From: Phallusia mammillata
Lineage: Eukaryota
Direction of reading: 5' to 3'
Length of the DNA stretch: 64,000 bases
Assembly (NCBI GenBank): GCA_965637545.1
Contig: OZ281500.1
Coordinates: forward strand, 23,684,001 to 23,748,000
Shown here one piece after another: positions 8,557-56,524 of this stretch. Position 1 is the first letter of the stretch. Each line of letters begins with the position of its first letter. Made by a program: the position numbers and the translations under genes. Under the pieces are notes generated by a model. That model had not been told where the DNA came from. It saw nothing but the letters and a program-made list of their open reading frames with translations, and did no database searches.

Positions 8557-10070
8557 AGCAGAACCTTTAGCAAACCAATTCCAAAACCTCCTTATTACAG
8601 CAGCAACTGACCTGTTTGTCTGGTAATGCAACCCAGTTAACGGGCGTTTTACGCTAATCATTAACTAGTGACGCAAACTAAGCAGTGTGTTTGTTGCAGG
8701 AACAAAAAGAAAAATGGCGATTTTTTGATTAAACAGTTGTGTCTTTTTGCGATTATTTAAAACAACGGTTCTTGAACGTCTTTTAAAACAAACTAGCCTA
8801 TACTTGAATGTACTCGTAAAGCTGGCTTGCTGACGCCAAAACAACATTAACATGAAACCCACCATACAAAAAATCTACAACACAAAAAGTTGAACTAAAA
8901 CTTTCAAGGTCTAGATCAGAAGTCTAACTGTGGAGTTGTTTTTGTTTTTAGTACGTAAATTCATGTCACTTTTGTAACTCCTGTTAACATATTAAATTTA
9001 ATTCGTGAAAAGAAACAAAGCTATAATTCTAAAGTCTCAATACGGGAGTAAATGGGGTTAATTTCTCGTCTATTTGGGTAATAAGTTTAAAATGGGGGTT
9101 GGTAACTTTTAAAGAATCGGACAATGTTGAAACAATAATGAATCTCTAAATAAAGTGACAACTTTTTATACCAATGGTGGCCCTGCACAAATTTAAAAAA
9201 CCGTTACAATACTTTTAAGGATGTAATCAATGTGTCAAAGCTTGAGATTGTAAGCTTGTAAATCGCAATGTAATTTGTACACAATGTAATTCAATCAACA
9301 GTCACAAATATCGCAAACACTTCAACAATAATACGTCGTTAGTGCCCGGGTATTTCCGTATCCAGCCTTCAATGGTAAATATTAACGCAAGCATTTCGAA
9401 CGAGAAAAAAGGTTTGTGGTTTTTCACAAACAATGCATTAAGACATGAATCAATGGTTATCGAACACTGTTGTTGTGACAAAACAATCGCGAGAAATTAT
9501 CGAAAGCGTGTAACAATGAACACTCGTGTAATGAACTTGCATAATGTAACAATTAACAAAACAAAACATGCTTTTCCTCTAATTTCGTCAACTTAGCTAG
9601 TTTTTAGTTGAAAAGTTTGAGATGTAAGATACGACAAGATATATAGTTGATTAAAAAATACCTGTGTAAATAAATGACATAATTGTTGTGTCACATAGTG
9701 GTAACAATGATCAACTAAATTGCACGAGCTGAGCGAGGACGTTTTTGGTGGGTCATTAAAGCAATAGTAATGACATAAAGGCAGTGGTGGGATTCAGTCG
9801 GTTCGCATCGGTTCTAAACCGTCTCACGAAATTTTATAAACCGGTTAGCATTACTGGTTACTGTCAATGGATTATTTGTAACAAAACCGGCTGAAAAACA
9901 TGGCTTTTGTGATAGAACCGGTTGACAAAAAAATTGAATTCCACCACTGCACAAAAGGGTTTTAAACAAACCAGTAGAATCTAAATTTCGGCAAACAATT
10001 TTAAACAAAGTAACCCAATTCTGGAAACAATCAAACTTTACAGGAACATAATTGTTAAGTGTAAAAGGCT

Positions 10071-13000
10071 TTACATCAAACTGACGATGCTGGCAAAAAC
10101 TGAAACGACAAATGCAAATAAAGTAGATTTCAACTGTGTGGACATATTTTTTGATATTTTAACAAAATCGACGAGTAACTTATCAGTAAACTGGGGAAGT
10201 CGATTCTTAAGCCGGACCGAAGCAGTAGCTGTGTTTTGGTCAGCCAAAGGTCCGGTTGTCCAGTCTTCGAAAAAATTTATGTCGGTTATGAGTTCTACGT
10301 CACGAACGCGCGCGACGTGTTCGATAACTGTTTGTGAAATCCAAACTTCGTCGGGTTCGTCGCCCTGAAAAAGTAACAACAAAAATTTTTACATCTGATT
10401 ACGAATTATCAAGGAAAATAGCAAACAAATTTTATTACTTTATTAAATATATTTAAATTTGTTTTTGATTTTGGCCCAAAAAAATGGCAGTGGTTGTGTA
10501 ATAATTAATGCTTTTGCACTGCTGAAGACAGCAGCGGCTGTAAGACATTTTGCCAAGTATGTATTCATTATATATAAGCTCTATGGCACTTCTGACTTTG
10601 TCTTGTGTCTCTGTTTATTTTATCAATAATGAAATTCATGATTAAAAATTTACAGTTGAATAAAAAAAAAACGGGCATATAACCCCCTAAGTTAGTCCTC
10701 AGTATTAAAAATACTAAGTGTGTTAAAATTGAACATTTAATCACGATTAAACTTCAGCAAGGACCTTATTACAACAAAAAAGCACAGAACAACAACAACA
10801 ACAAAAGTTACATTGAAACATTTCAACTGCAATATGACTACGTATCAATACTGTACTGCTCTGTTAAATTTTAATTTCAGCGATCATTATTTTGGCTTAA
10901 AAAATTTTGGCTAAAAAATTCTTACCGCATAACAAGGTTTGTCTTTGAAATTTGGAATAATGAAACTCAAAACTTCCACGTCATCGGGTGATGACGTACA
11001 ATTCGCAATACTCATCCCTGAATGCGAACAATATGCAACTATGATGTAATAATGGGTCGGCATAGGGATCCCAGGTGCAGCATCAATTACATCACTGAAA
11101 GTAAAAATGTAAATCAAGACATTAAAATTTAGTCCGATAATTCATTTTAACTAACCATGGTAACCGAAAACAGGCCAACAAGTCGTAATCGTCCGAAATT
11201 CCGTTGTGGTCGTAGTCAAATGCAGGTCCAAGCATTACTAGCGTTTCCCCGTGAAAATACGACCAATTTCCCACCGTTTCCATCATATAGTTCCAAACTA
11301 AAGTAAAACACAAGCTGCATACAGTGCACACTGTTTCGACCTAAGGATGAGACCTTATAGGTCGAAACAGTGTGCACAGTCTGCAGCTTATTATTTATTG
11401 GCTCTGTACTTTTACAAAGTAAAACACATTTTTTTTAATACTCTAAATATGGAAACATGTTCCCATGGAAACAGAATCAGTCGATAATGCTTAAGAATAT
11501 AAATACTTCGCCGATTGTCATCGTCAGTTTCTTATTCAAATAGAATCAGTGATCGTCGATAAGTATGCTGCCTGTCAGAGGGTTATATACCGCTCAATCG
11601 ACCGACTCGAACATTTTTTAAATATTTTATCTTTTAATTTTTTTTCTGATCATTTTTTTTCTGTATATAACTTAGTAAGAGGACCATTCGGTCTGATTTA
11701 AAAACTGATTTAATAAAGGTTAAAGAAAAAAATCTTTTAATTTTGAAAGTGTTTGTTAGGTTTAGAATCGTAAGCGCACCCGAAATTCGAGCCCGAACCC
11801 GAATCGTTTCGGATAAACCCGTTTAGGCCCGAAAGTTTGATTGACAAGTCTATAACAAAAAAGACATGCACAACAATCGCACGCAATGGCTCAAGCAAGA
11901 CGTTTTAGGGCTGTGCGGCAGCATCAGGTTAAGTTCAGCAACTTAGCTCGGTAATTTAAATTTAAAAAAATTACGAACACAGAACGTGAAGTCATTCCCG
12001 CCTTAAGCCCATTTGTTACAAAAATCAAAACCTGAACCTGCCCCGAAAAGGCTGGCCCGACTTACAACTATGGTGCGGCTTTATGCAACACGGCTAACGG
12101 AATATCTAAACATTTGCTCGATTGCCGTTCACAATTGGACGGCCTTCTGTCACCTTGGGAAGAACGCCGAGCCTAATAAACTTACTTTTTACGGAATTCT
12201 TATAAATCGGAACTCGGTTGGTAGAAATGGACGCGTCGTTTTGTTCGGTCCCGGAAGTGAATCCTGTTACGGAATAAATTTGAGGAAAAGATATCATTAC
12301 TTTATAATAAATGGGTGTGTAGACCCCAAGGGCTCCGCGAGGTTGGCTATGGGGGGAGGCAGAAAAAAGGTACAGGATTACAGGATTACAAAACAAGCCT
12401 GAGTTGGATCACTAAAATATCATCTTTTCTGTTGTCAATTACTAAACAAATAATTAAATTTACCTAGAGTTTTCGGTTAAGCAAAAACACATTTGATTTA
12501 CTTGTTTTAACTTGTTATTGCACACCCATATGCACTGCATAACCTCTTTTTCATTTTAAAAATATTATTATTAGGATTTTACCGAAAACGCTTCGGGCAA
12601 AATTTAAGCATAGCGCAGTTATGCAATTTAAAAGAGGTCCATTACATAACGGTTGGAATTGGAAATCACTACAGTATACATATATGTCAGATGATACTGC
12701 TTCATTGCAAGGTCACTGTGAAGATTAAACTTACCAGGTTGGTACAAATACGTGGTAGTTGCAACGTTTTGGAAGTTTTTCGAAATTACAAACTCATCGT
12801 GATATCTCGGGTCGCAGCGGTCACAGACTTCGGATACCTCAAGGCCAGGCTAAAGCAAAACAAGCAAAATTGGAAGGTTTTGATTCTAAGGGCAGTGTCA
12901 CGTATATAGTATAGTTTTTGTGTACCTTCGACCTATTTAATACGAAGCTGGTAAAAAGCGGCATTTGTGGTGGAGTTTCCAACATAGTGACGTAGTTTTG

Positions 13001-16000
13001 CTGATAGAAAAAGCAATCGGAGGTATACGGCTGTTTTGTCACACCTAGTGGTAGATGCTTTGCCAGTGTTGAAGAGACTGGAAAAAATGAATGGTTTAAA
13101 AACATACAAGTCAGGCAACGGTGCTTGTGATTCGACTTTCGACAGGCTCACAACTGAGCCTTGCTGGAGCACAAGTCCCGGACAGACTCCAGTAGTTGGT
13201 TCGAATCCCACCGCAGGCTAGATTTTTTCTAGCATGTGCCTTGCCATATGTGAATGCTTGAGACCAACTTGATTTGGTATGACGCCTTTAATAGGCCTGG
13301 CGTATCATATGATTTATCAACGAGTATGCCGTGATCGCATAGACGCTTCAAGGCTGATCGTACTTATCTTGTACTTACCTTGGTTTAAAAGCCATCGAAA
13401 AAAATTAGTTAAAAAGTCCAGTGCTTCAATCATTTTTTTCTTTCCAGTCGGTTACGATGAATATGAATATATTCATACTGGGATCAGCCCTGAAGCGTAG
13501 ATTTTTCTAGCTTAGGCCTGGCGTACTTTGATTTAGTTTAAACGGTTCAATTTTCCCAATAAACAGCATTATGATATTATAAGTGTTTCGAAATGATTAG
13601 AAGTTTAACAGATTTTATAAAAGTTACGTCTTAGGTGGGCAACGAAGCATGCACTGTAGAATATTAGAAAATCTTACTTTGTTGATCGGACAAGTAAAGC
13701 CTTTGGTTGACTTTTGTTGAGTTAGTCTGAAAAAAAAATGTATTAGCTGCATAATTTACGAAAACATGTATAAGCGAAAATACATAGTTTAAGTCTTGAT
13801 CAGCACAACGCATATTGACATTAAAATTAAATGCAACCTGCTTTCGCGGACAATCCTAGTTTATAGAGTAAGACAAATAAGCTATGTTCAGTTTCTGGTT
13901 AGTTAAAAATCAGCAACACAGAAAATGTATTTTAGGCTTCGTATTTTGGCACAAATTAGTATCTAGACCAGTGGTTCTCAAACTTTTTTATTGTCGGGGC
14001 CAAATGGTAGACTTTTAAGTGTGTAAGGAGTCGCAAAAAAACAAAACCTCAGAACATCACTATAGATTATTTCCTTGAAAGCTAAAATAGCAATCTTTGG
14101 AGTTTTTTTGAGGTCTGGTGCGACCCGCAAAATGCGTAGTTGGGAGCCGCATGCGGCCCTGAGAGCCGCGTTTGAGAATCACTGATCTAGGTTTATTATT
14201 AAAAAACGAGCACGCTTTCCGACAGGAAGAGTTAACCAGTTCCATTTATACCTTGCTGCAATTGGCGCAATCTGATTCCCATGGAACTACCCAGCACGGC
14301 CCAGTAGCGCCATCTACCGGAAAGGTGAGATTAAGTGAAGGCGGAGACCTCATCACGTGATACATCGAACCCTTTGTTCCATTGTTCGGGGCAGCCGTAA
14401 TGTTCAGCAAATCTGAGCGTAAAAGATATGCTGGTTAGTTTAGTTGGAAAGTGTTACCGTACCAAAATCTACAAAATGGTTCTAAAATTGTGGCCCATTG
14501 CCCAGCATTATGCCTTTTCAATGTCTCAAAAAAAGTTGGGCTTGTATATCTAGTGATATTGTAAGATAAAATAAGCTGGAAGGGATGGAGGGTTATGTTT
14601 CTTCTAGAAGTACACAATCAAATACATAAACTAATTTGTGTATGCGTGCAAGATAAAGGCCTACCGGTTAGTTCGCAAATAAACATTACATAAATGAATT
14701 ATATAATTGTGTCGATATTTAGGTTTAAAATTCGAATAAAATATTTAATTATCCACAAATGATTGTGTTATGTAGGGCAAGAAATAAAACAGATTGATTA
14801 AAACAAACAAAACAACAATATAAGATATGTTTCGTTCAATAGAGATTTCGTATAAAGTCTACCTGCCATAAGATTGTACACCTCGATGTTTTCAAACGGT
14901 TCCGTGGAATTGTAATTCTGTTTGAAACCGGGTCCGTGTGCTGCAAATAATGCCTGAAACAGAATAATTTAAACTCGTATAAATTCAGTACAAATACAAT
15001 GTCAGGTTTTGGCAACATGATTTATTAAATTTGTGGCAGCAAACAGAAGCAGCAAAATTACAAAAGCGAGTATTTTGTCTAGCACAAAACCGATTGAACG
15101 TTAAGATTGTTCAATAAGCAAACAAAAAACACAGACGTTAAAAGTAGCTACTAAGAATGTTTTTTTTTGCTGATGTATAGCATGTAACAAATACATTTTA
15201 GGTTATTGTATAAATTAGAAACAAGCACATGTTGTTTTAACGATGATATTAACGTTTTTGTTCAAACTTTTGAGTAAAATGTATTTGTTACATGCTATAC
15301 ATCAGCAAAAAAAACATTCTTAGTAGCTACTTTTAACGTCTGTGTTTTTTGTTTGCTTATTGAACAATCTTAACGTTCAATCGGTTTTGTGCTAGACAAA
15401 ATACTCGCTTTTGTAATTTTGCTGCTTCTGTTTGCTGCCACAAATTTAATAAATCATGTTGCCAAAAATTCAACAAGTGACCTCACATGTATTATTTTAA
15501 AACCTATAAACTTTTGTTACTAGTTTACAAACAAACAACCCACTCACATGCATACTGGCGAATTCGGGATCAAACCCATGACTCCCTCCGTCGCATTTCG
15601 TGTAAGAACCTTTTTTGCTGAAAAAGAAACGCATCAAAAATAGTTTTGCTGTTTTACAATTTTACAATTATTTATCTTGCAGCCACCAAGGTTAAAAAGG
15701 AATAACAATACGTTCCCATAGTTTAACAATATTGAAATAGATGGCAATACAAATTAATAATTTAGATTTTCTCTAATTATGGAAACAGGTTTCCAGAGAA
15801 ACAGAATCAGTCGTTAAAGGTTTAAGAATATATATTTCGCCTATTGGCATCGTCAGTTCTGTAAAAGCGAGAAAAAAGCAACAATAAAATGAAGATAAAA
15901 CATCAACAGGCTAAAAACCAACACCCAAACCACTTCACAGGTGGAAAGGCGCTAACTGTACGCGTATGGGTCTGGCAAGCAATGACGCCCAAACCCGCGC

Positions 16001-19000
16001 ACCAATCAAGTCTTATCAGAGACGCGGATGAAACGCGCCTAGCATTCGAACGGGCACAATAGGAGATAAGAGGCAAAGGAGGGCGCAACGATAACGAAAG
16101 CAGATGAAACAACATAAACAAAATACAAAAATGCGACATACGAGGCAACCAATAAATTGACTATCTGATTTTAGACAGTATCATACGCTGAATGTAATTT
16201 AGATTTTGTTTTACTTTGATTTATAACGCGTTGTATGGTAAATTATAACTAGATTGTAGCAAATACAGATGAAAGACAAAAATTTGTATTTATACAGACT
16301 TTAATTTGTCTACAAAAAACTTTTCTCACCCTTCAACGAGATAGGTGTCGTCCATTAAAAGAATGACGTCATCGATCCTTTGGTTGTTCGCGTAATGGAA
16401 ACGTTTCGGAAGATATTCGTCTTTCAGGAAGGCCTAGAAATACCAAAAATACCAAACTTAACCGAAAGTAGAATTCTGAATTTTTAAATTCCAGAACCAG
16501 ACGATAATTCATCAAATTCATCAATTTTTGATTTTCTGAAAATTACAAAGACTTTGTTTAACATATCATTATTATTATTTAATATTATTTTGTATTATTT
16601 GTTCAATATATTTTTTTTTATTTTTTTGTTTACATATAAACTAATATGGATAAAAACAATAACAAAAATCAGCATTCCGGGGAATTAAAACTGTAGCATT
16701 TTCGTTTCGCCGTCATTGTTTGGTAACAATCTGATCATTTGCCCACTTGATTGATAAAAATAAACATTGTGACATCACAAACACAATTATGACACTGACC
16801 TGCCAATGCGCCTCCTTCCGTTTGCATTTTAATTTCTCATAAACTTGAGTTACATTGTAGCTCGCTTCAGCCACCGGATCAAGGTTGCTCCCAACACGAC
16901 CAGCTGACCCACTTTTAACGAAATACTTGGAGGCGTCGACCCCAAATTTTTCGATGCTCGTCAACCGACTGCATTTGACAGGCGACATTCCTACAGCAAA
17001 ATAAAATACATAAATAAAAATTTAATCTGTAAAGACAGAGAAGAACAGTTGAGATTAGCCCTGAAGCGTCGATGCAAACCAGTGATCACAGCAAATTTCA
17101 AAGCAGGCAACGGTGCTTGTGATTCAACTTGCGACGGGTTCTCCACTGAGCCTGCGTAGCATCGTGGGTCGAATCCCACCACAGGCTAGATTTTTTTAGC
17201 CTACGCCTTGCCGTATGGTGAATGCTTGGTGACTGGCTGATTCGGCACAATGCTTTCGATTGGCCTGGCGTACAGTGATTTGTTAATAAGGTTAAAAATT
17301 GTAGAGAACGACAGACCTGCTAAAAACATTATTAGTTCAACTAAAAAATAGCGTACAATAATATCACTGTTACCCTGCCTAGCAGAACAAAAAATAAAAA
17401 AAGACCTGCAAGAAATATTACTAATTACAAAAGATAAGGGCCTGGCAAAAAGGGTTTTATTACCAGATAAGGGTATTATTACCAAATAAGGGTTTTATTA
17501 CTAAACAAAACGTACAAAGAACTGCAAGAGGTATTACCTAAAAATGTTTATTAGATAATCTTTTTAACGTTTACCGTGATCTGCGAGCATTATAATGTTG
17601 ACGCAATTCAGGAGCCCTCGGTCTCTCAGTCCGTTCATTAATATTCCAACCATGGTATCTGCTGTCTTGAGGGTTTTATCAAAACCCGACCGTACTGGTC
17701 CGTATTTGTGCCCGGCAGAATCGAGAATGGAAATGTACAAAGTAATGAATGATGGTCTGCAAGGGGTAAAGATATTGCATATATTAAAAAAAATTCTCCA
17801 GCGGTTTCCCAAAATTTGGACTTGCAACTACAACTACAGTTTTTGGTATTTAAATGAAACACTTGCGTTCTCTTAAAACTACTTAGCGGTCACCCAAACC
17901 AAACCTTAAAAAAACCCTGACTGGGTATGTTATGGTTGTTAAGACTTTCAAAGGTTATTTTATCCAAAAAATCTACAATATCCAGCAGTTGGTATGGAGT
18001 TTTGGACACGAAAATAACAAACTTGCACGTGAAAGCAGATGTATAAGCTATTGCTGCCAGGCATAATATCAAATTTATAGAGCTCTTCTGGCAGGTAACC
18101 CATTGGGAATACTTATCTTTTTACTTAACCCAAAACATTGTTATGTCGTTAATAAATGTTGATGAAAAGTTGAATTAAATTTTTAATTACCGCTGTCCCG
18201 TGGGCAAATCCAACCAATCAAGTGCTTGATACATTCTCTCTTCGTTCGGTACGCTTCCGTCATATTTAAAATAATAATCGGGATATCTTGTTATGTTGAC
18301 GTCAGAGCCTGGCCAGAAATAGGTGGCGCTCTTGAGGCCCTGGTTACTGGCAGTCACCCAAATCTGGAATTGTCAAAACAAAATAATGCAAAATGAAACA
18401 GAAAAATTGGTTTGCATAAAAATCATAGATGAAAAAGGGAAACTAAGTAAAATGAAATTGTAAATCAGATTAAATTACGCTTTATGAATAGGTTTCATAT
18501 AGTTTACGCCAAGCATATATTAAAGGCGTTATACCGAATAAAGCCGGTCACCAAGCTTTTCCACAAGGCAAGGCATATGGGCTAGAAACACGGTTTTAAA
18601 GCTTTGATACATTTTACACTGACAATAACAACAAACATTGTTAAAACATTAAAATGTTTAAAAGGCCAATTAAAATATTTAATCAAGCTTCTTCTAAAGA
18701 TAATGTCTAGTGCAGCTATAATAAAGTATGGCTATGATAAAAAAAACTCAAAAAATCACGACATTTTCCAAGTAACAATATTGCTGCTCTTATATTTCCA
18801 ACGCATAACAACTCACCGGTTCACCTTTCCACCAGTAAGGCTGAAACGACTCTTGGTTGCCAAGTCGAAATTTCTTCCTCAAAACACGATCAATCATTAC
18901 GTTGCCCACAATCCCACTGCTTTCAGGATATAGACCCTGGAATTGAAAAAAGTTACTGAGTCCAGAAAATCGTATGACATAAAATTGTACAATTGTATCA

Positions 19001-22000
19001 ATCCAACAGTGATGAAAAATTCTCAAAAAATAATGATCTTCAAAACAAAATTAAAATTCTGAAATAATCAACTAAATCGCGTTTTAATTTAATTTTCAAT
19101 GACCGTTTCAGTTCTTAAATTTTGACACATTTTTAAGTAACAACTATGCACATTTAATAATCCCAGTGGTGAGATTCAATTTTTTGTCAGTCTGGTTCTG
19201 TTACAAAAAATCCATTGACAGTAACCAGTAATGCTAACCAGTTCGCTGACCTCCTCTAATTTCGTGAGACGCTTTTATAGAACGGGTGCGAACCGGCTGA
19301 ATCCCACCACTGCTAATAACTGACATCAACCTTGAAGGGTTGATGCAGACCATCACGGCACAATCATATAAAATTCATAGTACTCTTGTTTTAGCGCAAT
19401 TGTGCTACCAGTTTTTTTAAGGGCTTGGTTAGTGTGTGCCAACTATACTTCCGAAAGATAGCAACAACACTTACCGTAGCAATTGTGTAGTGATTGGGAA
19501 ACGTCTTGGTTGGATAAACCGATCTCATATACGGGACGTGCACTCCACATGATGCTAAGAAACAAACGAAGATTGAATTTTAAAAGATTGTGGCGGAAAA
19601 ATTTATTAAAATTTCCCGTTTCAGAGCCTTTTAATTGACTGATGGTTTAAAGCAGTGGTTCCCAACCTGGGCCCATGCCCCCCTAGGGGGGCCCACGAGC
19701 TGTGTTCCGGGGGGCCACGGGTGTAGATTCACTAGAAACACCCACTAAAAGCGATTTTCTTTCTAACTTTTTTTCCTAATTCAATCGACTATTTCACATA
19801 CTATTTGTCTATATTGAGGTTTTTCACGATTGCGGATTCTTGATTACACTATTAGACCTGTTTAAAGCCGAAATTAGTACCGAATTCCAACACGAGATTG
19901 CCTTTTACAAGGGGGCCACAGGTCCTTCAGGGTTACTTAAAGGGGGCCACGAGGCCAAAAAGTGACTTTTAGGGGGCCACGGTCCACCAAAGGTTGGGAA
20001 CCACTGGTTTAAAGTATAACTCAAGAAAGTTCTAAGTTTAAAATATTTGTCGAAAATCTGAGAAAAAGAACGTGCACTCCTTTTGAAAGGTGGCTATTGA
20101 AAAAATGCTTTCTCAAGCTTCGATAAAACACAACAAAATTGCCGTGTTGGGCGCACCAAAGCAAACCTCCACAAATGGGGCTTCGTACAAGATGCATATT
20201 GTAAATGTGGCCTAGAAACTCAAACGATGGACCATATATTATCCCGCTGCCCTCTTGGCCCAGCATGCGCTGACCAATCTTTGAGGGACATCACGGAAGA
20301 GGCCCTCACCTGGCTCCAGCACTGGCGTGACAAGCTATGATGAACAAAATTGTAGATCCTACAATAACTGTTACGTTTAGTAAAACATAATCATTAAGTT
20401 AATGGTGTTTATTTTAGCATTTTTTTATTCACCAAGTTTGTGAATGTTAGGAGTCAATTCCCTGTACAGATATTCGGCTTTAAAACCGTCGATTGAAAAT
20501 AATATCACGGGAGGAATTTCGAATCTAGAAATAATCAATTGTTCAGTGTTATTGTGCGGTCACAATGAAAACAAACAAAGATTTATAGCTGCTTTATTCA
20601 GCCCTTTGCCGTTTTAAATGTTGTTTGACTTTGAAGTTTGAAGCAAGATTTAAGAACACGTTTACATAAATAAATATATATATGTACCATTCTAACAGTT
20701 TTGCTTAACGAACCCAAGTTATTCGCTGTTGTGGTGATTTGTTTTTCAATTAACTATAACTTGTAGATTTAACCGCGGATCATTTGCACTTTGACCTAAT
20801 TCACTTACCCTGCAGGGCATTTTTGTTCAATTCCTTTGTTGCAAGCTTCTTTCGACCATGGTAGTTTGTCTACAATACATAACAAGTTAATTGTTTAATG
20901 CAAAATTACAAACGTGCAGTAAAAACTAAAACACTTATTTCAACGATAATAGTACCAGTAATACATAAGCGTTTGGACAATTATATCATATATGTTTCAC
21001 GATCTAAAGTTCTAACCCAGGGTCGGCAACCCTTGACACGCGTGCCATGGTTGGCAGACGAGGTGGTTTTTCATGGCACGCCCACCGATTTGCGTGTTAA
21101 TATTGAAGTAACAAATTAACCTGTTACACTGCTTGTTTATAGTTTTTATCATGCCATTGTCTTAATTCAGCCTTACATGTACAAAACACTCTGCTTTCTC
21201 TTTATTATTGATATCTGCTGGCACCAACCACTATTATTTAGAAAAACTTTGGCACGTTTTTTTTAACACATGGAAACAACAAGTAAATTAGCACGCGTCG
21301 CCCAAAACGTTGTCGACCCCCTGTTCTAAACCCTATTGGCAGAAACAGGGCAAATGAATTGATTTATTATCAAAATTTCCCTTTCCCCAAGCTAAAAGTC
21401 AGTCTCATTACTTTTAGCCTTTGTTAATCTTTTTTGAACTGTCCATAAAGTTAACATTTCCTAAGTCTTTTAACGCTTCCACATGGGGCCACGTTTTTAT
21501 ATTAACCGGCCAGTACGTACAGTTTCGTGACAGGATAAAATGCTGTAAAATTTTCCGGCCATATGCGCAATTTCCAGTATAATTGCCAAAATAAAGATTA
21601 TCTTACTTAAGCAAGTTTCTTGATAGTCTGCGCAGCAGTTTTTGGCGGCAAGACAAGTATTTCTACAATCACATCGTTCTCTTGTAACGTTACATTGTCC
21701 TTTGCAGAAATATCTCTCAGTTTCTGCATAAAAACACATAAATTAAGGTGTTTTCATCAGCATTTACAGTTAAAACTTTAGACACAATAGGCAGTTTTGT
21801 CGTCACAATGCATATTGACGTCACACAGGTCATCGCAAAAAACAATTATCACATTTAGTGCTAAGATATAATAACTGCCTAATTGTAAATATTACATTTT
21901 CCCTACAATGTATTGATGCTACACTATAAGGCTCTTTGTGACTAACCATTCACTTTACAAAGAGTGTTAAAATCATCACAGCAATTGTTGTATCTTGAAC

Positions 22001-23912
22001 AGGCAGTATTGCATTGACATTTATTTTGTGGATTGTATTTCGATTTGCATCTTCCTTGACATGACAAAGATGTTGAAGGTGTCTGTGCACCTGAAAAAAA
22101 GTAGTATACCAGATCAAAATACAGCAGCAACAATGAAAAATCATAAAATACTTGACTAACGTAAGAATATTATTTGTATCAGTTCTTTTGTATGAAAATG
22201 TTCATTAAAAAAGCAGATCGGTTGAGTGTTTAAGCCAGGAAGACGGTTAAGAGTTGTAAAAAAACAGTAAAATATACCTGTTCCAGCTGTACAAAGTGAG
22301 TTAAAATCTCCACAGCAATTGTTATATCTTGGACAAGCTGTATTGCACTGACATTTATTATTCTTGTTATATTTCGAATTGCATCTTCCTTGGCATGACA
22401 GAGAAGTAGAAGGTGTCTGTGCCGCTGTGAAAAAGTAAATTACTAAATCTAAATACAGCAATAACTATGAAAAAACAATCGAATACGTTACTGATTGTTG
22501 GCATATTATTTGTACCATCTTTTGCACAAAAAAATTGATTTAAAAAAGCAGACGGTTATGGGGTTTATGGAAATGCAACAGAACATGCCTGTTCTAGCTT
22601 TGCAAAGAGAGTTAAAGTCTCCACAGCAATCTTTAAATTTTGAACAAGCTGTATTGCACTGGCATTTGTTATTCTTGTTAAATCTCGAATTGCATCTTCC
22701 TTGGCAGGTTAGTGAAGTTTCTGGCGAATTGTCTAAAAAATAACGAACTGTCGACATACATATATTACTAGGTTCCCCTTAAACGCCCTGAAGACCAGCG
22801 ATCACGGTACATTCAGTGGTGGGATTCAGCCGGTTCGCACCAGTTCTATAGAGCCGCCTCAAGGAATTTTATAAGATCAGCGAACCGGTTAGCATTACTG
22901 GTTACTGTCAATGGCATTTTTGTAACAGAACCGGCTGAAAAATATCACTTTTGTGATAGATCCGGCTGAGAAAAAAATTGAATCCCACCACTGGGTATAT
23001 TCATATATAAATCAAAGGAATACTTAAAGTCCATCATGATTAAAAACAAGAACTTGACAAAAAGAATTTTATTGTATTGAAACAAATTTAACAGGGGGTA
23101 AAGTTGTTGTTGTTTTTTTGTTTTTAGTACCCGGTTAATATTTTGTGTTTATTTACATTTTACAGCATGTTTAAATTTGCTACACGAAAGCGGTACTGCA
23201 TTCGTGATTTAATGACCGCTTTACGGGCCAGCATGACGCCAACAGTTCCGCAACACGAAGAAAAGTGGATCACTATATATTGGTGACTTCAAACATGAAG
23301 CCGTCGCGAAACTGGTTTAAAGAAAATGATTGATGTTCATGTTTACATGGTTTGTACCCTGGACACGAGTTGTAAGTGGGGGCCGGATTTAAGCTTGATC
23401 AAAACGGGTTTGATTCGGGGCTGACTTCACACTATATAGGGCATATTTGTGTCGTAAATCCACATTAATATAAACAAACTTTCGGGTCGTATGTTAAAAA
23501 CCCATCGGGCTCGCACACGCTTACAGGTCCACCAGGCGGTATTTCAAACATTTGTAGCTGGCTATAATCTGTTTAATTGTAATTGCATTTATAGCAAAAA
23601 CAAGAAAATAAACTTTTTTCGCTAACAAGTGAGTTTATTTGATTTTCATTTCTACTGAAATCTCAACAAGCGTTACTGAAACACCTCACTTCAATAAATG
23701 ACCAATACACCAACGCCAAAATCCGGAACAATAAAAATTCTCAATACTTAACTGTTTGATTGGCTTTCCGCTGACTGAATTACCAGCACGGTAAAGACCA
23801 ATGTTCCGAACATTAGAGCTCGCAGGGTTCCCTGAAAACGAAAACACAGTAGTTAAACTAATGCACAACAAACATTGCAAACGAAACACACTCTTACCTG
23901 AAAACTCAACAT
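10071..23912 (-). CDS. ENPP-B: complete ENPP1/3-like gene with signal peptide, 4 SMB domains, PDE, nuclease-like domain and C-terminal GPI-like tail
   Basis: Exons: 23898-23912 (MLSFQ); 23753-23831 ([26 protein letters not shown]); SMB 22589-22732, 22278-22424, 21947-22090, 21607-21723; ~20809-20870; ~20433-20523 (SIDGF); ~19476-19555 (PTKTFPNH); ~18820-18939; ~18192-18364; ~17575-17758 (LDSAGH, ADHG); ~16797-16992; ~16329-16432; ~15547-15617 (GSHGFD); ~14864-14954 ([16 protein letters not shown]); ~14252-14412 (APNNGT); ~13678-13726; ~12925-13079 (HLPLG); ~12735-12849; ~12188-12265; ~11165-11297 (EF-hand DYDHNGISD); ~10925-11097 (PTHYY); 10071-10366 ([12 protein letters not shown]...stop). 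Most junctions were checked and keep frame. Confidence 0.93.
11312..11389. repeat. 78-bp hairpin (32-bp arms, 2 mismatches)
   Basis: AAGCTGCATACAGTGCACACTGTTTCGACCTA ... TAGGTCGAAACAGTGTGCACAGTCTGCAGCTT. Confidence 0.85.
13110..13352 (+). mobile_element. tRNA-derived SINE-like repeat; other pieces at 17057-17275, 19326-19375, 22783-22813, ~35060-35095, ~37690-37725, ~45945-46010 and ~61365-61445
   Basis: B-box-like GGTTCGAATCCC followed by a shared body (..AGGCCTGGCGTAC..) and tail (..GCCGTGATCGC..GACGCTTCAGGG). It is dispersed in both orientations and has no complete cloverleaf. Confidence 0.65.
13969..14184. mobile_element. hAT-type MITE; an inverted partial copy lies at ~53543-53640
   Basis: TIR CAGTGGTTCTCAAAC, TSD ATCTAGAC/ATCTAGGT, shared GCCGCATGCGGC core. 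Confidence 0.75.
15007..15467. repeat. ~193-bp near-perfect inverted repeat with a 74-bp spacer, inside an ENPP-B intron
   Basis: 15007-15200 is the reverse complement of 15275-15467, apart from a 1-nt difference in a poly-T/A run. Confidence 0.92.
19653..20006. mobile_element. hAT (Buster/Charlie-like) MITE
   Basis: TIR CAGTGGTTCCCAACCT, perfect TSD GTTTAAAG, internal GGGGGCCAC repeats. Confidence 0.85.
20142..20343 (+). mobile_element. 5'-truncated non-LTR retrotransposon 3' end (C-terminal CCHC module; RTE-X/I-group-like)
   Basis: Open frame ..[50 protein letters not shown] followed by a TGATGA tail. It is flanked by a perfect 9-bp direct repeat ACAAAATTG (20133-20141, 20344-20352). The clade assignment is from motif recall. 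Confidence 0.8.
21018..21323. mobile_element. hAT-type MITE
   Basis: Termini CAGGGTCGGCAACC / GTTGTCGACCCCCTG, TSD TTCTAACC/TTCTAAAC (7/8). A similar left end occurs at 33117. Confidence 0.72.
21940..22760 (-). repeat. Tandem triplication of an SMB exon plus flanking intron (~320-bp period)
   Basis: Three exons encode [36 protein letters not shown], and the adjacent intron sequence is also recognisably similar. Confidence 0.9.
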
Positions 23913-43730: not shown

Positions 43731-46700
43731 CTAAAACCGATAAAACGTTGCCAGTAGGCATGCTAAGCTCATCAACACATTTTGTGGACTTGTTCTTGTG
43801 GCGGGGGAAGCACCTAAATCTTGCAGCCAATCGCTAGTGAATTGTGGGAGGAAAACTTTCCTCCGGATGGCGGCTCTTCTGGTGGTTTGAGATTCGCTCC
43901 GGGTCCAGAGTGGGAAGAAGTTGAGTCCGGCAACAAGCTCCACATCACGGATCCGAGCAACATGTTGAGTCAACGTCGTCGCGCCCCAACTTCGCACAGG
44001 TTCGTCAGTCTGTGTTGGAAACAAAATGTGCCAATAACGTTTCGTTAGGAATGTTTATGGTTTTAGTGTTTATGAGCATGCACACAAGCTCACTGAGGAC
44101 CACTGTGAGCAAAATTAAATATAAAAATTGATCTTTTCCCCCTCACCTTACGACACGGATATTCCTCAAAGTTTGGAATAATGAAACTCAAGACTTCCAC
44201 GTCATCGGGCGATGACGTACACTGCATAATTGGAGTTCCTACCTCAGCGCATCGCGTCATTACCAAGAAAAAGTGGGTGGGGATGGGCGTGGCTGTGATG
44301 TCACTCCCCAGAAATTGTCCTTGGCTGTCGAAAAAGTCGTTCTTTCAAAATATACGATAGAAAACTAAAGGAAAATTACCAAAAGCAATTCTTGTAAAAT
44401 ATGAAAAAGTAACGACAGTAAATGTAAAAAATACTTTTTCAAGTGTGAAGAAGTACAATTAATACGCAGAAGTGAAATAACATAGATAGCTGTTACCAAC
44501 GAGTAAATAAAACAAAGAACTTTTATCAAAGCAACAATCAATTGATTCTTGTTTATAAGTACATACGTCACAATGGTGTCGTTTGTGTCTGGAAGTCCGT
44601 CATAATCATAATCGAACACAGGTCCAGCGGTGACAGCCAAACCCCCAAAATCGTTCGCCCATCTTCCCATCTCACCAGCCATGAAACTCCACACTGCATT
44701 TAAGGTAACACGAAATTTACAAATCAGGCGTCGTTTGTGGGTTGCGAAAGTTTCGCAGTTACTTCCACTTTTATTACCAAGATCTTTGGACTTGGAAATA
44801 AAACGGAATAAAAATGTGCTCAGCTGTTTTCAATGTAACATCTCGTTGTGATGGTAACTAATTTACCGCATTGAATACCGAAATAAATAAAGTATATTTT
44901 GTGCAAAATTTAGTGCATTTGCAACGTTAAAATTTATGCATAGCAGCAGGGTTTTTTTTAAGGTTTGGTTTGGGTGACCGCTAAGTAGTTTTAAGAGACC
45001 GCAAGTGTTTCATTTAAATACCAAAAAATAGCCATATTTGCTTTTTGGGAAACCGCTGGAGAAATTCTTAACCGGTGGGAAATTTCCCACTAGTGGGAAA
45101 TTTAATGTTTTTAGAGGGAAATTATCTAAGTCAGGTAACTAAACTCGGGCCCGAGGGTCAAACCCGGCTTTGAATTATTCGTTGAAAGTTACTTAACTAA
45201 CATTTTTCCGCAAAAACATGTAAGATTAATTTCAGCAAGGCTTGCAAGACACATATAAATCCAAAGGCCGTTTGTTACATTACAGACAAGACTAAAAGTA
45301 TCAATGACTTTACTATTGTGCGCGAATAAAAGCCTTTCCTTTATTGATTGTGATGCAATAAATGACCAATGCAAGCAGAGCAGACTCTTCAGTATTCCAA
45401 AAAGTTTAATCTCTCACAGAAGCACTATTTACTAAATAAGATTGCAGTATACCTTTGGAGTTCCAGACCAAATCGCTTCACAAAATTATTTCATTAAAAG
45501 AATAATTTTTTGTCAACGTAGGGCACAAAACATCATTATAAAAATAACAGAGGGGGAAATTCGAAGTCGAAGTTGACTTTAGTGGGAAACCACACCAAAA
45601 AGGTTAAGAACCACTGGGTTAAACGAAAATAATCGCTCGTGAGAATAAATTCAACAGGTTCTCGAAACTTAATGATAAAACAAGCCAGCATTTCCACTTA
45701 CTCTCTGCGGTGGCAGGATACATTGGCACTGTGTTGGTTCGGATCAAAGCATCGTGCACCGCGTCTCCGTTCGATAATTCTGCGGTTTACAAAACATCTA
45801 TCTTTAAACATGCATTGTGATTTCACGGAGACAGGTATATAACGCAAGTGTCAGCATAATATCTGCACTAATTGAAATTTGAAACTACATAAGTGCAAGA
45901 AAAAATGCAAAAAGCAAAAGTATTGGTTTCAAACGTTAAAAGTCGTACACCAGGCCCACTGAAGGCGCCATACCGAATCAGCCTGTCGCCAAGTATTCAC
46001 CACCAAATGGCAAGGCGAAGGCTAGAAAAAGTTTTTTTCTGAATTTAGTTTTTACTTCAATGCAAGCCCAATAACGGAACATCTAGAGGTACACCTATTT
46101 TTACAAACACAATGCATCTCTGCTCCCACCTGGTGGATATAAGAAAGCTGATTTCACGGTGTCCTGGTCAGTGTAGGATGAACAGCCAGTTTGAAACGCC
46201 AACATACGATAATCCGAGCGGCTGCAACCAACAGGAGCTTCCATGTCCCGTTTCTGCAATAAACACACACAGAAAAAGTAAGCCGAGTGTTGAATTTTGT
46301 AATAACGAAACGAAACCACAAGGTTGCGTGTTCTAATCCCGCATCTTGAAAGGATTTCGAAACAAAACACACCCAAATGAGCGAATTTTTTTGATACATA
46401 ACAGCACGTTTTTCTATGTTATATTTCAAGCAAGTTCATACATCACAAAAATTTAATAAATAAACGACATTGTTTAAATGTATTTCAGCAGAGCTTTTTT
46501 CCCATAGTTTAGTCTTTAGTGCATCTATAGGTTTCATACAAGTCGGAAAGCACTGACTTAGACATAGAGAATTTCTTCTTACCACATCTTGTAGGGTGAA
46601 AGTGACGTAGACAGGTTGTTTCTTGTCTATGTTGTGTTCGTTTGTGAAATCTTTCTGACCCAGCAAGCAGTGGTGCTGCATAGGTTCAACATAAATTGTT

Positions 46701-55700: not shown

Positions 55701-56524
55701 GAACTGGCTGACAAAAAAATTGAATACCACCACTGGTTGTACGGCTAAACGCAACAAATCAATACAAACCCTGTATGTATGCAAATTCCTGCAAAGAAAA
55801 TGAAATTACAACGAAAATATATCGAAGAGAAAATCTGTGCCCAAGTCCAGTCTTGACTTACACCCGATTTCCTGACAAAATTACAAGGCTGTTTCAGGGC
55901 AGATCCTTGATTTTCATAAGCTGTTAATTCGGTCGCTAATTTGTTCAGTTACCTTGGCATGAAGTCAGATAATCGGAGCAGCAGTTTTTGGCGGCAACGC
56001 ACACGTTTGTGCAATCACACCTGGCCCTTGTTACGTCACACTGTCCATTGCACAAATAATCTGAAATCGATAACAACAGAAATAATACGCGTTATTATGT
56101 TGGTTTTGACAAGTCGCATATTAAGGCTAAGATGTGTTAATTGCCCGAAAACGAAAAACATTTGCTAAAAGGTTTGATGCCATTTCTTACTGTGAGTACA
56201 GAAATCTTAACGAAAATTGTCGCATATTTTCAAACGTCTAATCTTGACCGGTTGCTAAAAACCTTGTGCCAAAATTTTTACCAACTACGAATTATATTTT
56301 AATCAAAAACATATCTATCAGAGTACTTGTGTATATAGAATACATTATGCAGACGTTTCAACAATCACTGTTGCCATCATCAGTGCAGACTGCAGGTGAT
56401 AATATAGCTTTTACAAGTATTGTTAAAAACACCTTTATCAGAAAATACCTGAATTCTGGGCCAAACCACAGTAAAACAGACTAAGCAAAGTCAAACAAAG
56501 CAGTGAATAGGTTCCACTTAACAT
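43731..56524 (-). CDS. ENPP-C: complete ENPP1/3-like gene with signal peptide, a single SMB domain, PDE, nuclease-like domain and C-terminal GPI-like tail
   Basis: Exons 56449-56524 ([25 protein letters not shown]); SMB 55953-56060; ~55202-55263; ~54856-54947 (SIDGF); ~54331-54410 (PTITFPSH); ~53768-53887; ~53090-53263; ~52280-52463 (LDHAGH, ADHG); ~50955-51150; ~50420-50522; ~49899-49968 (GMHGYDN); ~49175-49265; ~47841-48013 (APNNGT); ~47553-47604; ~46581-46742 (YGRP); ~46129-46255; ~45701-45778; ~44569-44695 (DYDYDGLPD); ~44146-44340 (PTHFF); 43731-~44015 ([10 protein letters not shown]...stop). Intron positions mirror ENPP-A and ENPP-B. The 44569/44340 junction phase is not fully resolved. 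Confidence 0.92.
46943..47434. mobile_element. hAT (Buster/Charlie-like) MITE
   Basis: TIR CAGTGGTTCCCAACCT / AGGTTGGGAAACACTG, perfect TSD CCCTACAT. Confidence 0.85.
48662..48819. mobile_element. Short hAT-like MITE
   Basis: ~20-bp inverted ends CAGTGATTTTC(G)ACCGGTGTT; TSD degenerate. Confidence 0.6.
51617..52175. mobile_element. Non-autonomous hAT element; a second, inverted and truncated copy lies at ~45064-45616
   Basis: TIR CAGTGGTTCTTAACC, perfect TSD GCCAAGAG. The interior is shared with 45064-45616 and partly with 5159-5580. It contains a decayed frame (..QTRLKVS..IDCDAI..) resembling the hAT C-terminal dimerisation region; that resemblance is an inference. Confidence 0.8.
54680..54816. 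mobile_element. PIF/Harbinger-type MITE
   Basis: Perfect 52-bp TIRs starting GGCTAGATCC, flanked by a TAA/TAA 3-bp TSD. Confidence 0.8.
55557..55735. mobile_element. hAT-type MITE family 1 (CAGTGGTGGGATTCA termini); further copies at 1605-1784, 9782-9950, 19164-19312 (inverted) and 22814-22993
   Basis: Related ~150-180 bp copies with ~15-bp TIRs. The TSD is perfect here (GTTGTACG) and 7/8 at 22814 (GGTACATT/GGTATATT). Confidence 0.85.

What the first reader, a model, noticed from the sequence alone, without database searches (positions are those of the whole stretch)
10071..10200. ENPP-B has an inverted membrane topology: signal peptide plus GPI-anchor-like C-terminus on an SMB-PDE-nuclease enzyme
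Seen: the N-terminus [29 protein letters not shown] looks cleavable. The C-terminus ..[29 protein letters not shown] has small residues, a polar spacer, a hydrophobic end and no cytoplasmic tail. Established: ENPP1/3 are type II proteins anchored at the N-terminus, ENPP2 is secreted, and GPI-anchored ENPP6 lacks SMB and nuclease-like domains. Inference: this is a hybrid topology tethered through the nuclease-like domain, so the SMB array would point away from the membrane and the enzyme could be shed.
Basis: partly seen in the sequence, partly recalled or inferred. Interest (0 to 1): 0.75.

Follow-up and report, generated by a model that had tools for sequence, protein, structure and literature searches.

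The report
Sea-squirt ENPP enzyme anchored by its tail
A sea-squirt relative of the human cell-surface enzymes ENPP1 and ENPP3 starts with a removable signal peptide and ends in a short greasy tail that looks like a GPI-anchor signal, so it is probably tethered by the opposite end; all sampled sea squirts share this, and no other sampled animal does.

Summary
The window comes from the ascidian Phallusia mammillata. ENPP-B is a 24-exon minus-strand gene (23912-10071) encoding about 989 aa: signal peptide, four SMB domains, PDE domain, nuclease-like domain, then a 38-residue extension that no solved ENPP1-3 has.

- **The extension.** It ends in 16 hydrophobic residues with nothing after them. 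An N-M-S triplet lies 9 residues upstream.
- **The 3' end is real.** A spliced RNA contig runs unspliced through the last exon into the tail. The model reproduces a public cDNA-derived protein (CAB3242642.1) at 713/714 residues, with the same stop.
- **The design is conserved.** A second paralogue in the window (ENPP-C) has it, as do 13 of 18 long ENPP models from Ciona, Clavelina, Styela and metatranscriptomes. The 14 tunicate proteins placed in the tree form one clade, sister to vertebrate ENPP1/3.
- **It is absent elsewhere.** None of 169 non-tunicate relatives has such a tail, and the complete models inspected carry the N-terminal anchor.

So the membrane tether switched ends once, on the tunicate stem. 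GPI attachment is the best reading (about 0.6). A tail-less transmembrane anchor like that of ENPP7 is the main rival. No GPI predictor or experiment was available, and I found no paper describing this. I rate it a new variant of a known kind, of moderate interest.

The parts
10071..23912 (-). ENPP-B gene, start codon to stop codon: 24 coding exons, about 989 aa
   Evidence: Local exon chain is open from ATG to stop; all introns are GT-AG except one GC donor. Exons 9-24 reproduce the public protein P0001 at 713/714 residues. The last 8 exons are confirmed by a spliced RNA contig.
23898..23912 (-). Coding exon 1: MLSFQ (start of the signal peptide), GTAAGA donor
   Evidence: An in-frame stop lies 5 codons upstream. 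No RNA evidence was obtained for this exon.
23753..23831 (-). Coding exon 2: rest of the signal peptide ([23 protein letters not shown]) and the proposed cleavage site AES|Q; ends in phase 1
   Evidence: It joins in frame to the SMB1 exon.
21607..22732 (-). Four SMB-domain exons, one domain per exon, phase 1-1: 22732-22589, 22424-22278, 22090-21947, 21723-21607
   Evidence: Pfam PF01033 hits, E 1e-11, 1.2e-11, 1.6e-11 and 6e-06; boundaries.
14252..20869 (-). Linker and phosphodiesterase (PDE) domain exons, carrying the catalytic Thr motif [10 protein letters not shown] and the metal-binding motifs
   Evidence: Pfam PF01663 on exon translations; invariant catalytic columns kept; exon chain.
10188..13726 (-). 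Lasso and nuclease-like (NUC) domain exons, up to the canonical ENPP1-3 end (...RLPQF)
   Evidence: The AF2 model of P0001 aligns to human ENPP1 at Z 38.1, model 1-678 to chain 248-921, the last residues resolved in those crystal structures, and to ENPP3 at Z 38.0, model 1-676 to chain 197-871; phmmer of the last exon against PDB.
10074..10187 (-). 38-residue C-terminal extension [38 protein letters not shown], absent from all solved ENPP1-3 structures
   Evidence: It lies in the same exon as the end of the NUC domain, and the RNA contig runs unspliced from 10363 to 10092.
10140..10148 (-). Candidate omega site N-M-S, 9 residues before the hydrophobic core (also an N-glycosylation sequon)
   Evidence: My own rule-based scan; this is not the output of a trained predictor.
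10074..10121 (-). Hydrophobic C-terminal core [16 protein letters not shown] (16 aa, mean Kyte-Doolittle 2.5), with no residue after it
   Evidence: The single difference from the public cDNA protein is L to F inside this core.
10071..10073 (-). Stop codon
   Evidence: same stop as P0001.
9225..10070 (-). Probable 3'UTR, carrying a high-copy repeat at 9804-9950
   Evidence: Run X1 has RNA depth in 9191-9781 and 9979-10372 (the 9782-9978 bin is dominated by the repeat) and a 294-nt contig at 9225-9518. The first polyadenylation-signal-like hexamer downstream of the stop is ATTAAA at 9002. The extent is inferred.
43731..44006 (-). Last exon of the paralogue ENPP-C: ...[39 protein letters not shown], then a stop; same design

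Best explanation
ENPP-B of the ascidian Phallusia mammillata is an expressed ENPP1/3-type ecto-phosphodiesterase that appears to keep its catalytic residues. It has four SMB domains, a PDE domain and a nuclease-like domain. It enters the secretory pathway through a cleavable N-terminal signal peptide instead of the type II signal anchor of its relatives. It is then attached to the outer face of the membrane through a C-terminal signal added after the nuclease-like domain. That signal consists of a conserved LPQF-x-x-x-(W/L)-x-x-DF motif, a polar spacer and a 12-16-residue hydrophobic end, with few or no residues after it. This is most likely a GPI-attachment signal: the transamidase would cut near N-M-S and add the lipid, leaving the SMB array free at the far end of the chain. 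Such an enzyme could be released by a phospholipase or protease. The design arose once on the tunicate stem, where it replaced the ancestral N-terminal anchor, and all sampled ascidian paralogues inherited it. Shown here: the sequence features, transcription and 3' end, conservation, absence in outgroups, and monophyly. Inferred: signal-peptide cleavage, GPI attachment itself, orientation and shedding.
For: Gene structure and expression:
- A spliced 1927-nt RNA contig covers the last 8 exons and reads through the tail-coding sequence to 10092.
- The window model equals the public cDNA-derived protein CAB3242642.1 at 713/714 residues and shares its stop.

Domains:
- Pfam SMB x4 and Phosphodiest hits.
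- The AF2 model (pLDDT 82) aligns to ENPP1 at Z 38.1 and ENPP3 at Z 38.0 over model residues 1-678. Residues 679-714 match nothing.
- The catalytic Thr and metal-ligand columns are invariant.

Signal features:
- N-terminal hydrophobic core of 14 residues, with A-x-S before the proposed cut.
- C-terminal core of 16 residues, none after it, and N-M-S 9 residues upstream.

Conservation of the property, not the sequence:
- ENPP-C in the same window has it.
- So do Ciona, Clavelina and Styela proteins, three full-length metatranscriptome proteins and seven last-exon ORF fragments, all with an unrelated hydrophobic end 0-7 residues from the terminus, mostly after a Ser/Thr-rich spacer.
- 10 of the 13 tailed long models also start with a signal-peptide-like segment; the other 3 are N-terminally incomplete.

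Outgroups:
- 0 of 169 non-tunicate ENPP1/3-type proteins have a C-terminal hydrophobic end.
- The complete models from amphioxus, sea urchins, Saccoglossus, Lineus, molluscs, annelids, lamprey and hagfish carry an N-terminal transmembrane anchor, in most after a cytoplasmic stretch.

Phylogeny:
- The 14 tunicate proteins form one clade (SH-aLRT 100), sister to vertebrate ENPP1/3 (97).

Hydrophobic cores of 12-16 residues are short for a membrane-spanning helix and typical of GPI signals (established knowledge).
Against: No trained predictor (NetGPI, PredGPI, big-PI, SignalP) could be run, and the omega site comes from my own simple rule. In ENPP-B the spacer is very short: the candidate omega site lies only 4 residues after the conserved DFV motif. 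AlphaFold draws residues 679-713 as one continuous helix at pLDDT 72-90, which would also fit a membrane helix. The uncharged stretch is 18 residues if the flanking S and T are counted. N-M-S is also a glycosylation sequon. ENPP7 has a signal peptide plus a C-terminal hydrophobic domain and is classed as a type I membrane protein, not GPI-anchored (PMC2360232, PMC8808174). Several relatives have one or two basic residues after the core, and one (Clavelina P0023) has 14 residues after it. The first coding exon has no RNA support here. Three complete tunicate models (two Styela, one Ciona) end without a tail.
Confidence: 0.6

Rival explanations
1. The C-terminal hydrophobic end is not exchanged for GPI. 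It stays in the protein as a type I transmembrane anchor with essentially no cytoplasmic tail, as described for ENPP7 (alkaline sphingomyelinase). The topology is still inverted relative to ENPP1/3, but release would need a protease rather than a phospholipase.
For: ENPP7 is described with an N-terminal signal peptide and a C-terminal hydrophobic domain that hooks it to the membrane, is classed as type I, and is released by trypsin (PMC2360232; PMC8808174). AlphaFold draws residues 679-713 of ENPP-B as one helix with fair confidence. The uncharged stretch [18 protein letters not shown] is 18 residues long. Some relatives have K or R just after the core, and P0023 has 14 more residues.
Against: Strictly hydrophobic cores are 12-16 residues in nearly all relatives, and 16 in ENPP-B, which is short for a bilayer span. 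ENPP-B, P0011 and P0026 have no residue at all after the core, so there is no positive stop-transfer flank. Small-residue triplets lie 6-13 residues upstream in almost every member, after Ser/Thr-rich stalks, which is the usual look of GPI proteins.
Confidence: 0.27
2. The tail does not serve as a stable anchor. The protein is mainly secreted, for example after juxtamembrane cleavage or inefficient GPI attachment, and the hydrophobic end acts only as a transient retention or sorting element.
For: The anchoring mode is labile in this family: ENPP2 is secreted, and snake venom PDE became secreted by swapping its first exon (PMC8808174; PMC10121219). Three complete tunicate models end without a hydrophobic tail (Styela P0007 and P0015, Ciona P0025), so soluble forms may exist.
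Against: The hydrophobic end is kept in two Phallusia paralogues and in most relatives across at least four ascidian genera although its sequence is not conserved. That argues for selection on a membrane-attachment function. In ENPP-B it lies in the same exon as the end of the folded domain, so it cannot be dropped by simple exon choice.
Confidence: 0.08
3. The C-terminus is a gene-model or assembly artefact: the true transcript ends or splices elsewhere.
For: The RNA contig stops at 10092, 18 nt before the last codon, and a high-copy repeat lies just downstream at 9804-9950.
Against: The contig runs unspliced through most of the tail. An independently deposited cDNA-derived protein has the same C-terminus and stop. 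Orthologues and a paralogue share the design. No splice joint leaves the last exon; the only joints downstream of it lie at the 9804-9950 repeat, one of them (9881 to 13969) without splice-site ends.
Confidence: 0.03

Closest known systems
Vertebrate ENPP1 and ENPP3 (type II ecto-nucleotide pyrophosphatases/phosphodiesterases)
   Same: Same SMB-PDE-lasso-NUC architecture and fold: Z 38.1 and 38.0, 35-39% identity, about 655 aligned residues. The catalytic Thr and metal ligands are kept. The tunicate clade is their sister group.
   Different: ENPP1/3 have an N-terminal cytoplasmic tail plus an uncleaved transmembrane anchor and end at ...LPxF plus a few residues. ENPP-B has a short cleavable-looking signal peptide, four SMB domains instead of two, and a 38-residue C-terminal extension with a hydrophobic end.
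ENPP6 (the only ENPP family member known to be GPI-anchored)
   Same: Signal peptide plus a C-terminal GPI-type signal on an ENPP catalytic domain (PMC8808174).
   Different: ENPP6 has the PDE domain only, with no SMB and no nuclease-like domain, and belongs to the ENPP4-7 subgroup. The anchor of ENPP-B follows the nuclease-like domain and arose independently within the ENPP1-3 subgroup.
ENPP7 / alkaline sphingomyelinase (also ENPP4, ENPP5)
   Same: N-terminal signal peptide and a C-terminal hydrophobic anchoring domain; can be released from the membrane (PMC2360232).
   Different: PDE-only enzymes classed as type I transmembrane. This is the precedent for the rival reading.
ENPP2 (autotaxin) and snake venom phosphodiesterase
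   Same: SMB-PDE-NUC enzymes in which the type II anchor was replaced by a signal peptide (PMC8808174; PMC10121219). Fold match to ENPP2 Z about 33.8 and to cobra PDE Z 38.0.
   Different: They are soluble, with no C-terminal membrane signal. None of the 169 non-tunicate sequences examined has one, the snake PDE P0040 among them; no ENPP2 sequence was in that set.
Ciona intestinalis XP_002123994.1 (993 aa, named 'venom phosphodiesterase 1-like' by automatic annotation)
   Same: Same design from end to end: signal peptide, SMB array, PDE, NUC, LPQFDSQWMNDF motif, Ser/Thr-rich spacer and hydrophobic end. 44% identity to ENPP-B.
   Different: Its spacer is much longer: about 34 residues between the DF motif and the core, against about 13 in ENPP-B. 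No paper in the searched library comments on its topology.

Membership tests
ENPP1-3 subgroup (SMB-PDE-NUC ecto-phosphodiesterases) | [quoted passage not shown] | tested here: met
   Four exon translations hit Pfam PF01033, E 1e-11 to 6e-06, all above the gathering score.
ENPP1-3 subgroup (SMB-PDE-NUC ecto-phosphodiesterases) | Type I phosphodiesterase domain with the catalytic Thr and zinc ligands | tested here: met
   PF01663 hits on exon translations. T9, D128, H132, D175, H176 and H288 of P0001 lie in columns invariant across 40 ENPP1/3 sequences. The first Asp (FSIDGF) lies in exon 8. Activity itself was not tested.
ENPP1-3 subgroup (SMB-PDE-NUC ecto-phosphodiesterases) | C-terminal nuclease-like domain packed on the PDE domain | tested here: met
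   The AF2 model aligns over residues 1-678 to ENPP1 (Z 38.1, rmsd 2.3 A, 656 residues) and ENPP3 (Z 38.0).
ENPP1/ENPP3 proper (type II membrane proteins) | N-terminal cytoplasmic tail plus an uncleaved transmembrane signal anchor | tested here: not met
   The hydrophobic segment starts at residue 11 and is 14 residues long, followed by A-E-S|Q. All N-terminally complete tunicate homologues start the same way, whereas complete outgroup models have a strongly hydrophobic 18-residue segment starting at residue 11-80, in most after a cytoplasmic stretch.
GPI-anchored proteins | Cleavable N-terminal signal peptide | tested here: inconclusive
   The sequence fits the (-3,-1) rule and the usual core length. 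No SignalP run and no RNA support for exon 1.
GPI-anchored proteins | Hydrophobic segment at the extreme C-terminus with no cytoplasmic tail | tested here: met
   16-residue core, mean Kyte-Doolittle 2.5, no residue after it. The 3' end is confirmed by RNA and by the public cDNA protein.
GPI-anchored proteins | Omega site: small residues at omega and omega+2, followed by a polar spacer of about 5-10 residues | tested here: inconclusive
   N-M-S lies 9 residues before the core and meets a simple rule of my own. No trained predictor was available offline.
GPI-anchored proteins | Covalent GPI: release by PI-PLC, dependence on the transamidase | not testable with these tools
   Needs an experiment.
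Type I single-pass ENPPs (ENPP4/5/7-like anchoring) | C-terminal membrane-spanning helix of about 20 residues, followed by cytoplasmic (usually basic) residues | tested here: inconclusive
   16 strictly hydrophobic or 18 uncharged residues, none after them. AlphaFold draws a continuous helix 679-713. The ENPP7 precedent shows that a near tail-less anchor can exist.

The most novel reading that the evidence does not exclude
Tunicate ENPP1/3-type enzymes are the first GPI-anchored SMB-PDE-nuclease ecto-phosphodiesterases. On the tunicate stem, the type II anchor kept from protostomes to lampreys was replaced in one step by a signal peptide plus a C-terminal GPI signal. That flipped which end of the enzyme faces the membrane and freed the N-terminus. 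The freed N-terminus then allowed expansion into tandem paralogues with variable SMB arrays (four in ENPP-B, about seven in ENPP-A) displayed outward as adhesive or ligand-binding modules.
Probability: 0.5. Interest if true: 0.55.

Novelty: new variant of a known kind. Interest (0 to 1): 0.45.

Why it matters
ENPP1-3 are studied intensively for roles in mineralisation, cGAMP/STING signalling, lysophosphatidic acid production and allergy. Textbook accounts give them only two membrane states: type II anchored (ENPP1/3) or secreted (ENPP2). The sister group of vertebrates shows a third state, tethering through the nuclease-like end.

The outgroup survey also fixes the direction of change. The type II anchor is ancestral for bilaterians and was lost once in tunicates.

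This offers a natural experiment on three questions: whether the orientation of the catalytic and SMB domains relative to the membrane matters for function, how easily the anchoring mode of an ectoenzyme can be swapped, and whether a free N-terminus permits SMB-array expansion.

It does not change the understanding of the catalytic mechanism, and it remains a sequence-level inference until GPI attachment is tested.

Tried and rejected
1. Pfam scans of the three last nuclease-like exons alone gave no hit. The domain was recognised only by phmmer against PDB and by fold comparison.
2. A region-restricted homologue search with the C-terminal 194 residues of the Ciona protein returned only 9 proteins already known, so it added nothing.
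3. Rfam found nothing in 8500-14500, and ORF listing of the transcribed intronic stretch 11441-12167 gave nothing convincing.
4. Literature searches for ascidian, Ciona or tunicate ENPP together with GPI or phylogeny found no relevant paper. This covers only the held library.
5. Look-ups for the source organism of anonymous homologues gave only sample codes.
6. Rejected, a downstream coding exon: no splice joint leaves the last exon, and ENPP-A's candidate start lies only about 2 kb downstream.
7. Rejected, a type II reading of the N-terminus: the hydrophobic core is too short, an in-frame stop lies just upstream, and all complete tunicate homologues begin with the same kind of short signal.
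8. My own automated exon chaining failed several times because the search windows were set too tight and one donor is GC. Explicit boundaries solved it.
9. Not done: my joined 989-aa model was used only locally, for frame and feature checks, and was not sent to any search or folding tool. Searches used exon references and the public protein P0001. The structure and the tree therefore lack the signal peptide and SMB part of ENPP-B.
Full report
**What is at the coordinates**

The finding lies at the 3' end of a minus-strand gene. Translation of 10074-10364 on the minus strand gives [28 protein letters not shown]...[47 protein letters not shown], with the stop at 10071-10073. The quoted N-terminus is real but split:
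- ATG at 23912-23910 encodes MLSFQ and is followed by a GTAAGA donor.
- A 66-nt intron follows, ending in a pyrimidine-rich AG acceptor.
- The next exon, 23831-23753, encodes [26 protein letters not shown] and ends in phase 1.
- An in-frame stop lies five codons upstream of the ATG.

**Organism and locus**

A HMMER search of the last exon against 1.84 billion representative proteins found one near-identical protein, P0001. It is CAB3242642.1 / A0A6F9DCN4, named 'venom phosphodiesterase 2-like', from Phallusia mammillata. The window is therefore ascidian DNA.

tblastn of P0001 and of its Ciona and Clavelina relatives shows three tandem minus-strand ENPP1/3-type genes:
- ENPP-C, about 56.5-43.7 kb.
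- ENPP-B, 23912-10071.
- ENPP-A, from about 8.0 kb to beyond the start of the window.

**Gene model**

Exon translations hit Pfam Somatomedin_B four times and Phosphodiest. A splice-aware walk along the window reproduces P0001 in 16 exons (19528-10074) at 713 of 714 residues. The one difference is L to F inside the hydrophobic tail.

Upstream, I chained the two signal-peptide exons, four one-domain SMB exons in phase 1-1, and two linker exons. The result is a 24-exon, 989-aa open frame. All introns are GT-AG except the donor of the SMB1 exon, which is GC.

This joined model was used only inside scripts.

**Transcription and the 3' end**

One sequencing-run search and one read-laying run were available, and I spent both on 8600-14500.
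- Run X1 holds a 1927-nt contig that joins 14252-14415, 13678-13726, 12926-13077, 12734-12849, 12186-12262, 11156-11297, 10925-11094 and 10092-10363. Every skipped piece has CT..AC ends, which is GT..AG on the minus strand. The contig is therefore spliced RNA.
- Its frame is open to the stop at 10071.
- It runs unspliced through the extension and most of the tail, and stops 18 nt before the last codon.
- No splice joint leaves the last exon towards a downstream exon. The only joints downstream of it lie at the 9804-9950 repeat; one (9881 to 13969) has no splice-site ends.
- X1 depth continues in 9191-9781 and 9979-10372 (the bin between is dominated by a repeat), and a 294-nt contig lies at 9225-9518.
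- The first polyadenylation-like hexamer downstream of the stop is ATTAAA at 9002.
- ENPP-A's candidate start ([27 protein letters not shown]..., ATG near 8017) follows about 2 kb downstream.

**How the end compares with known ENPPs**

phmmer of the last exon against PDB aligns its residues 11-68 to the last residues of ENPP1 (873-921 of 925), ENPP3 and cobra venom PDE.

I predicted the structure of P0001 from a 40-sequence alignment (mean pLDDT 82, pTM 0.86). Its best matches are:
- Human ENPP1: Z 38.1, rmsd 2.3 A, 656 residues, model 1-678 to chain 248-921.
- ENPP3: Z 38.0, model 1-676 to chain 197-871.
- Cobra venom PDE: Z 38.0.
- Autotaxin (ENPP2): Z about 33.8.

No match goes beyond model residue 682. 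Residues 677-714 of P0001, encoded by window 10074-10187, are therefore a 38-residue extension beyond the canonical ...LPQF end. AlphaFold draws 679-713 as one helix at pLDDT 72-90.

**Anatomy of the two signals**

N-terminus:
- One basic residue (R9).
- A 14-residue hydrophobic core, [14 protein letters not shown].
- Then Q-S-A-E-S|Q, with Ala at -3 and Ser at -1.

This is too short for a signal anchor and fits a cleavable signal peptide.

C-terminus:
- The motif [13 protein letters not shown].
- Then K-I-S-K.
- Then N-M-S, which is small at omega and omega+2 and is also a glycosylation sequon.
- Then the spacer T-Q-L-K-S-T.
- Then a 16-residue core, [16 protein letters not shown], with mean Kyte-Doolittle 2.5 and nothing after it.

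This is the canonical layout of a GPI-attachment signal. I could not run NetGPI, PredGPI or SignalP, so the omega call rests on a simple rule of my own.

**Conservation**

The property recurs while the sequence does not.
- ENPP-C in the same window ends ...[39 protein letters not shown]. It has a candidate signal peptide, [22 protein letters not shown], near 56524.
- Ciona intestinalis XP_002123994.1 (993 aa) starts MKLFTVAVLLVSVFGEPAFA and ends ...LPQFDSQWMNDF...TTSSTTKLTATN-LFYLVIISILWWL-N.
- Proteins from Clavelina and Styela show the same design: a conserved LPQF-x-S-x-W-x-x-DF motif, a polar and mostly Ser/Thr-rich spacer of 10-45 residues, a 9-16-residue core, and 0-7 residues after it. 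Small-residue triplets lie 6-13 residues upstream of the core.
- So do three full-length metatranscriptome proteins. One of them sits on a 3.6-kb intron-free transcript contig with a 3'UTR.
- So do seven anonymous last-exon ORF fragments.

By a fixed criterion (best 15-residue Kyte-Doolittle mean of at least 1.8 within the last 30 residues), 13 of 18 long tunicate models have the tail. Ten of those 13 also have a signal-peptide-like start, and the other three are N-terminally incomplete. Of the five without a tail, two are truncated at the LPQF motif. The other three (Styela P0007 and P0015, Ciona P0025) end after the DF motif and may be soluble paralogues or isoforms.

**Outgroups and direction of change**

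None of 169 non-tunicate ENPP1/3-type proteins of at least 600 aa meets the tail criterion. Complete models carry an N-terminal transmembrane segment, in most after a cytoplasmic stretch. It is often followed by a conserved GLGLGLG or GIGIGYAIG motif. These include:
- Branchiostoma (three genes).
- Strongylocentrotus and Diadema.
- Saccoglossus.
- Lineus.
- Bivalves and Octopus; among annelids, Dimorphilus.
- Lamprey and hagfish.

They end at ...LPxxLW, just where the tunicate extension begins.

A maximum-likelihood tree of 31 proteins puts the 14 tunicate sequences, including the metatranscriptome ones, in one clade (SH-aLRT 100). That clade is sister to vertebrate ENPP1/3 (97), with amphioxus and ambulacrarians outside. 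This was a quick search with SH-aLRT support only.

The simplest history is therefore that the type II anchor is ancestral. A single replacement by a signal peptide plus a C-terminal anchor happened on the tunicate (at least ascidian) stem, followed by tandem duplication. ENPP2 sequences were not in the tree.

**GPI or transmembrane?**

For GPI:
- The cores are 12-16 residues, which is short for a bilayer span.
- They sit at the very end of the chain.
- Small residues lie at the right distance upstream.
- Most relatives have Ser/Thr-rich stalks.

Against GPI:
- There is a family precedent. ENPP7 has a signal peptide and a C-terminal hydrophobic domain that hooks it to the membrane, and it is classed as type I (PMC2360232; PMC8808174).
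- The spacer of ENPP-B is unusually short.
- AlphaFold draws a continuous helix.
- Some relatives have basic residues after the core.

I put GPI at about 0.6, an ENPP7-like anchor at about 0.27, a mainly secreted form at 0.08 and an artefact at 0.03. In either of the first two cases the membrane tether is at the opposite end of the chain from ENPP1/3. That the SMB array points away from the membrane, and that the enzyme is shed, are inferences. I had no coordinates with which to measure where the termini emerge.

**Comparison with the literature**

[quoted passage not shown] Snake venom PDE became soluble by replacing the first exon of ENPP3 with one that encodes a signal peptide (PMC10121219). 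Four searches for ascidian, Ciona or tunicate ENPP with GPI or phylogeny terms found nothing on this topology. That covers only the held library.

The proteins themselves are public, under automatic names such as 'venom phosphodiesterase-like'. What is new is the recognition and the comparative pattern, not the sequences.

**Verdict**

The feature is best described as a lineage-wide inversion of membrane tethering in tunicate ENPP1/3-type enzymes, and a new variant of a known kind. Interest is moderate at 0.45. The finding is clean and conserved, is not described in the library I could search, and has evolutionary meaning. However, it awaits a simple biochemical test and does not by itself resolve an open question.

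Noticed in passing
window 43731-56524, minus strand: A third tandem ENPP1/3-type paralogue (ENPP-C) lies wholly inside the window. It has a candidate signal peptide ([22 protein letters not shown], near 56524) and the same [11 protein letters not shown] + spacer + hydrophobic C-terminus ending at 43731. Only one SMB-like hit was seen (56058-55951).
   Followed up: partly
window 22587-22588 (donor of SMB1 exon 22732-22589), minus strand: The first SMB exon of ENPP-B has a GC donor where its two sister exons have GT. The exon is phase 1-1, so skipping it would keep the frame; it may be an alternatively used cassette. No RNA evidence was obtained for this region.
   Followed up: no
window 9804-9950; also 11346-11391, 13139-13270, 13962-14009: A short high-copy repeat is present in very many RNA contigs (summed depth in the thousands in all four runs). 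One copy lies in the probable 3'UTR of ENPP-B, others in its introns. It causes spurious joints between copies, for example 9881 to 13969.
   Followed up: no
window 11441-12167 (inside the ENPP-B intron between exons 11297-11156 and 12263-12186): Unspliced RNA contigs cover this intronic stretch in runs X2, X3 and X5, which barely cover the ENPP-B exons. Run X1, which holds the spliced ENPP-B contig, has almost none. There is no Rfam hit and no convincing ORF. It may be an independent transcript or a transposon.
   Followed up: partly
window about 7940-8017, minus strand: Candidate start of ENPP-A: [29 protein letters not shown], signal-peptide-like, about 150 nt upstream of its first SMB hit and about 2 kb downstream of the ENPP-B stop. 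The C-terminus of ENPP-A lies outside the window.
   Followed up: no
proteins P0162, P0169, P0180, P0186, P0196, P0158, P0140, P0108 (outgroup ENPP1/3 homologues): A GLGLGLG or GIGIGYAIG motif directly after the N-terminal transmembrane segment is conserved from annelids and molluscs to amphioxus, sea urchins and lamprey. It is absent from all tunicate proteins.
   Followed up: no
proteins P0034, P0134-P0157 (mollusc homologues): Many mollusc ENPP-like proteins are 1,400-2,300 aa long. At least the Patella protein contains two consecutive PDE-NUC units and begins with a type II anchor.
   Followed up: no
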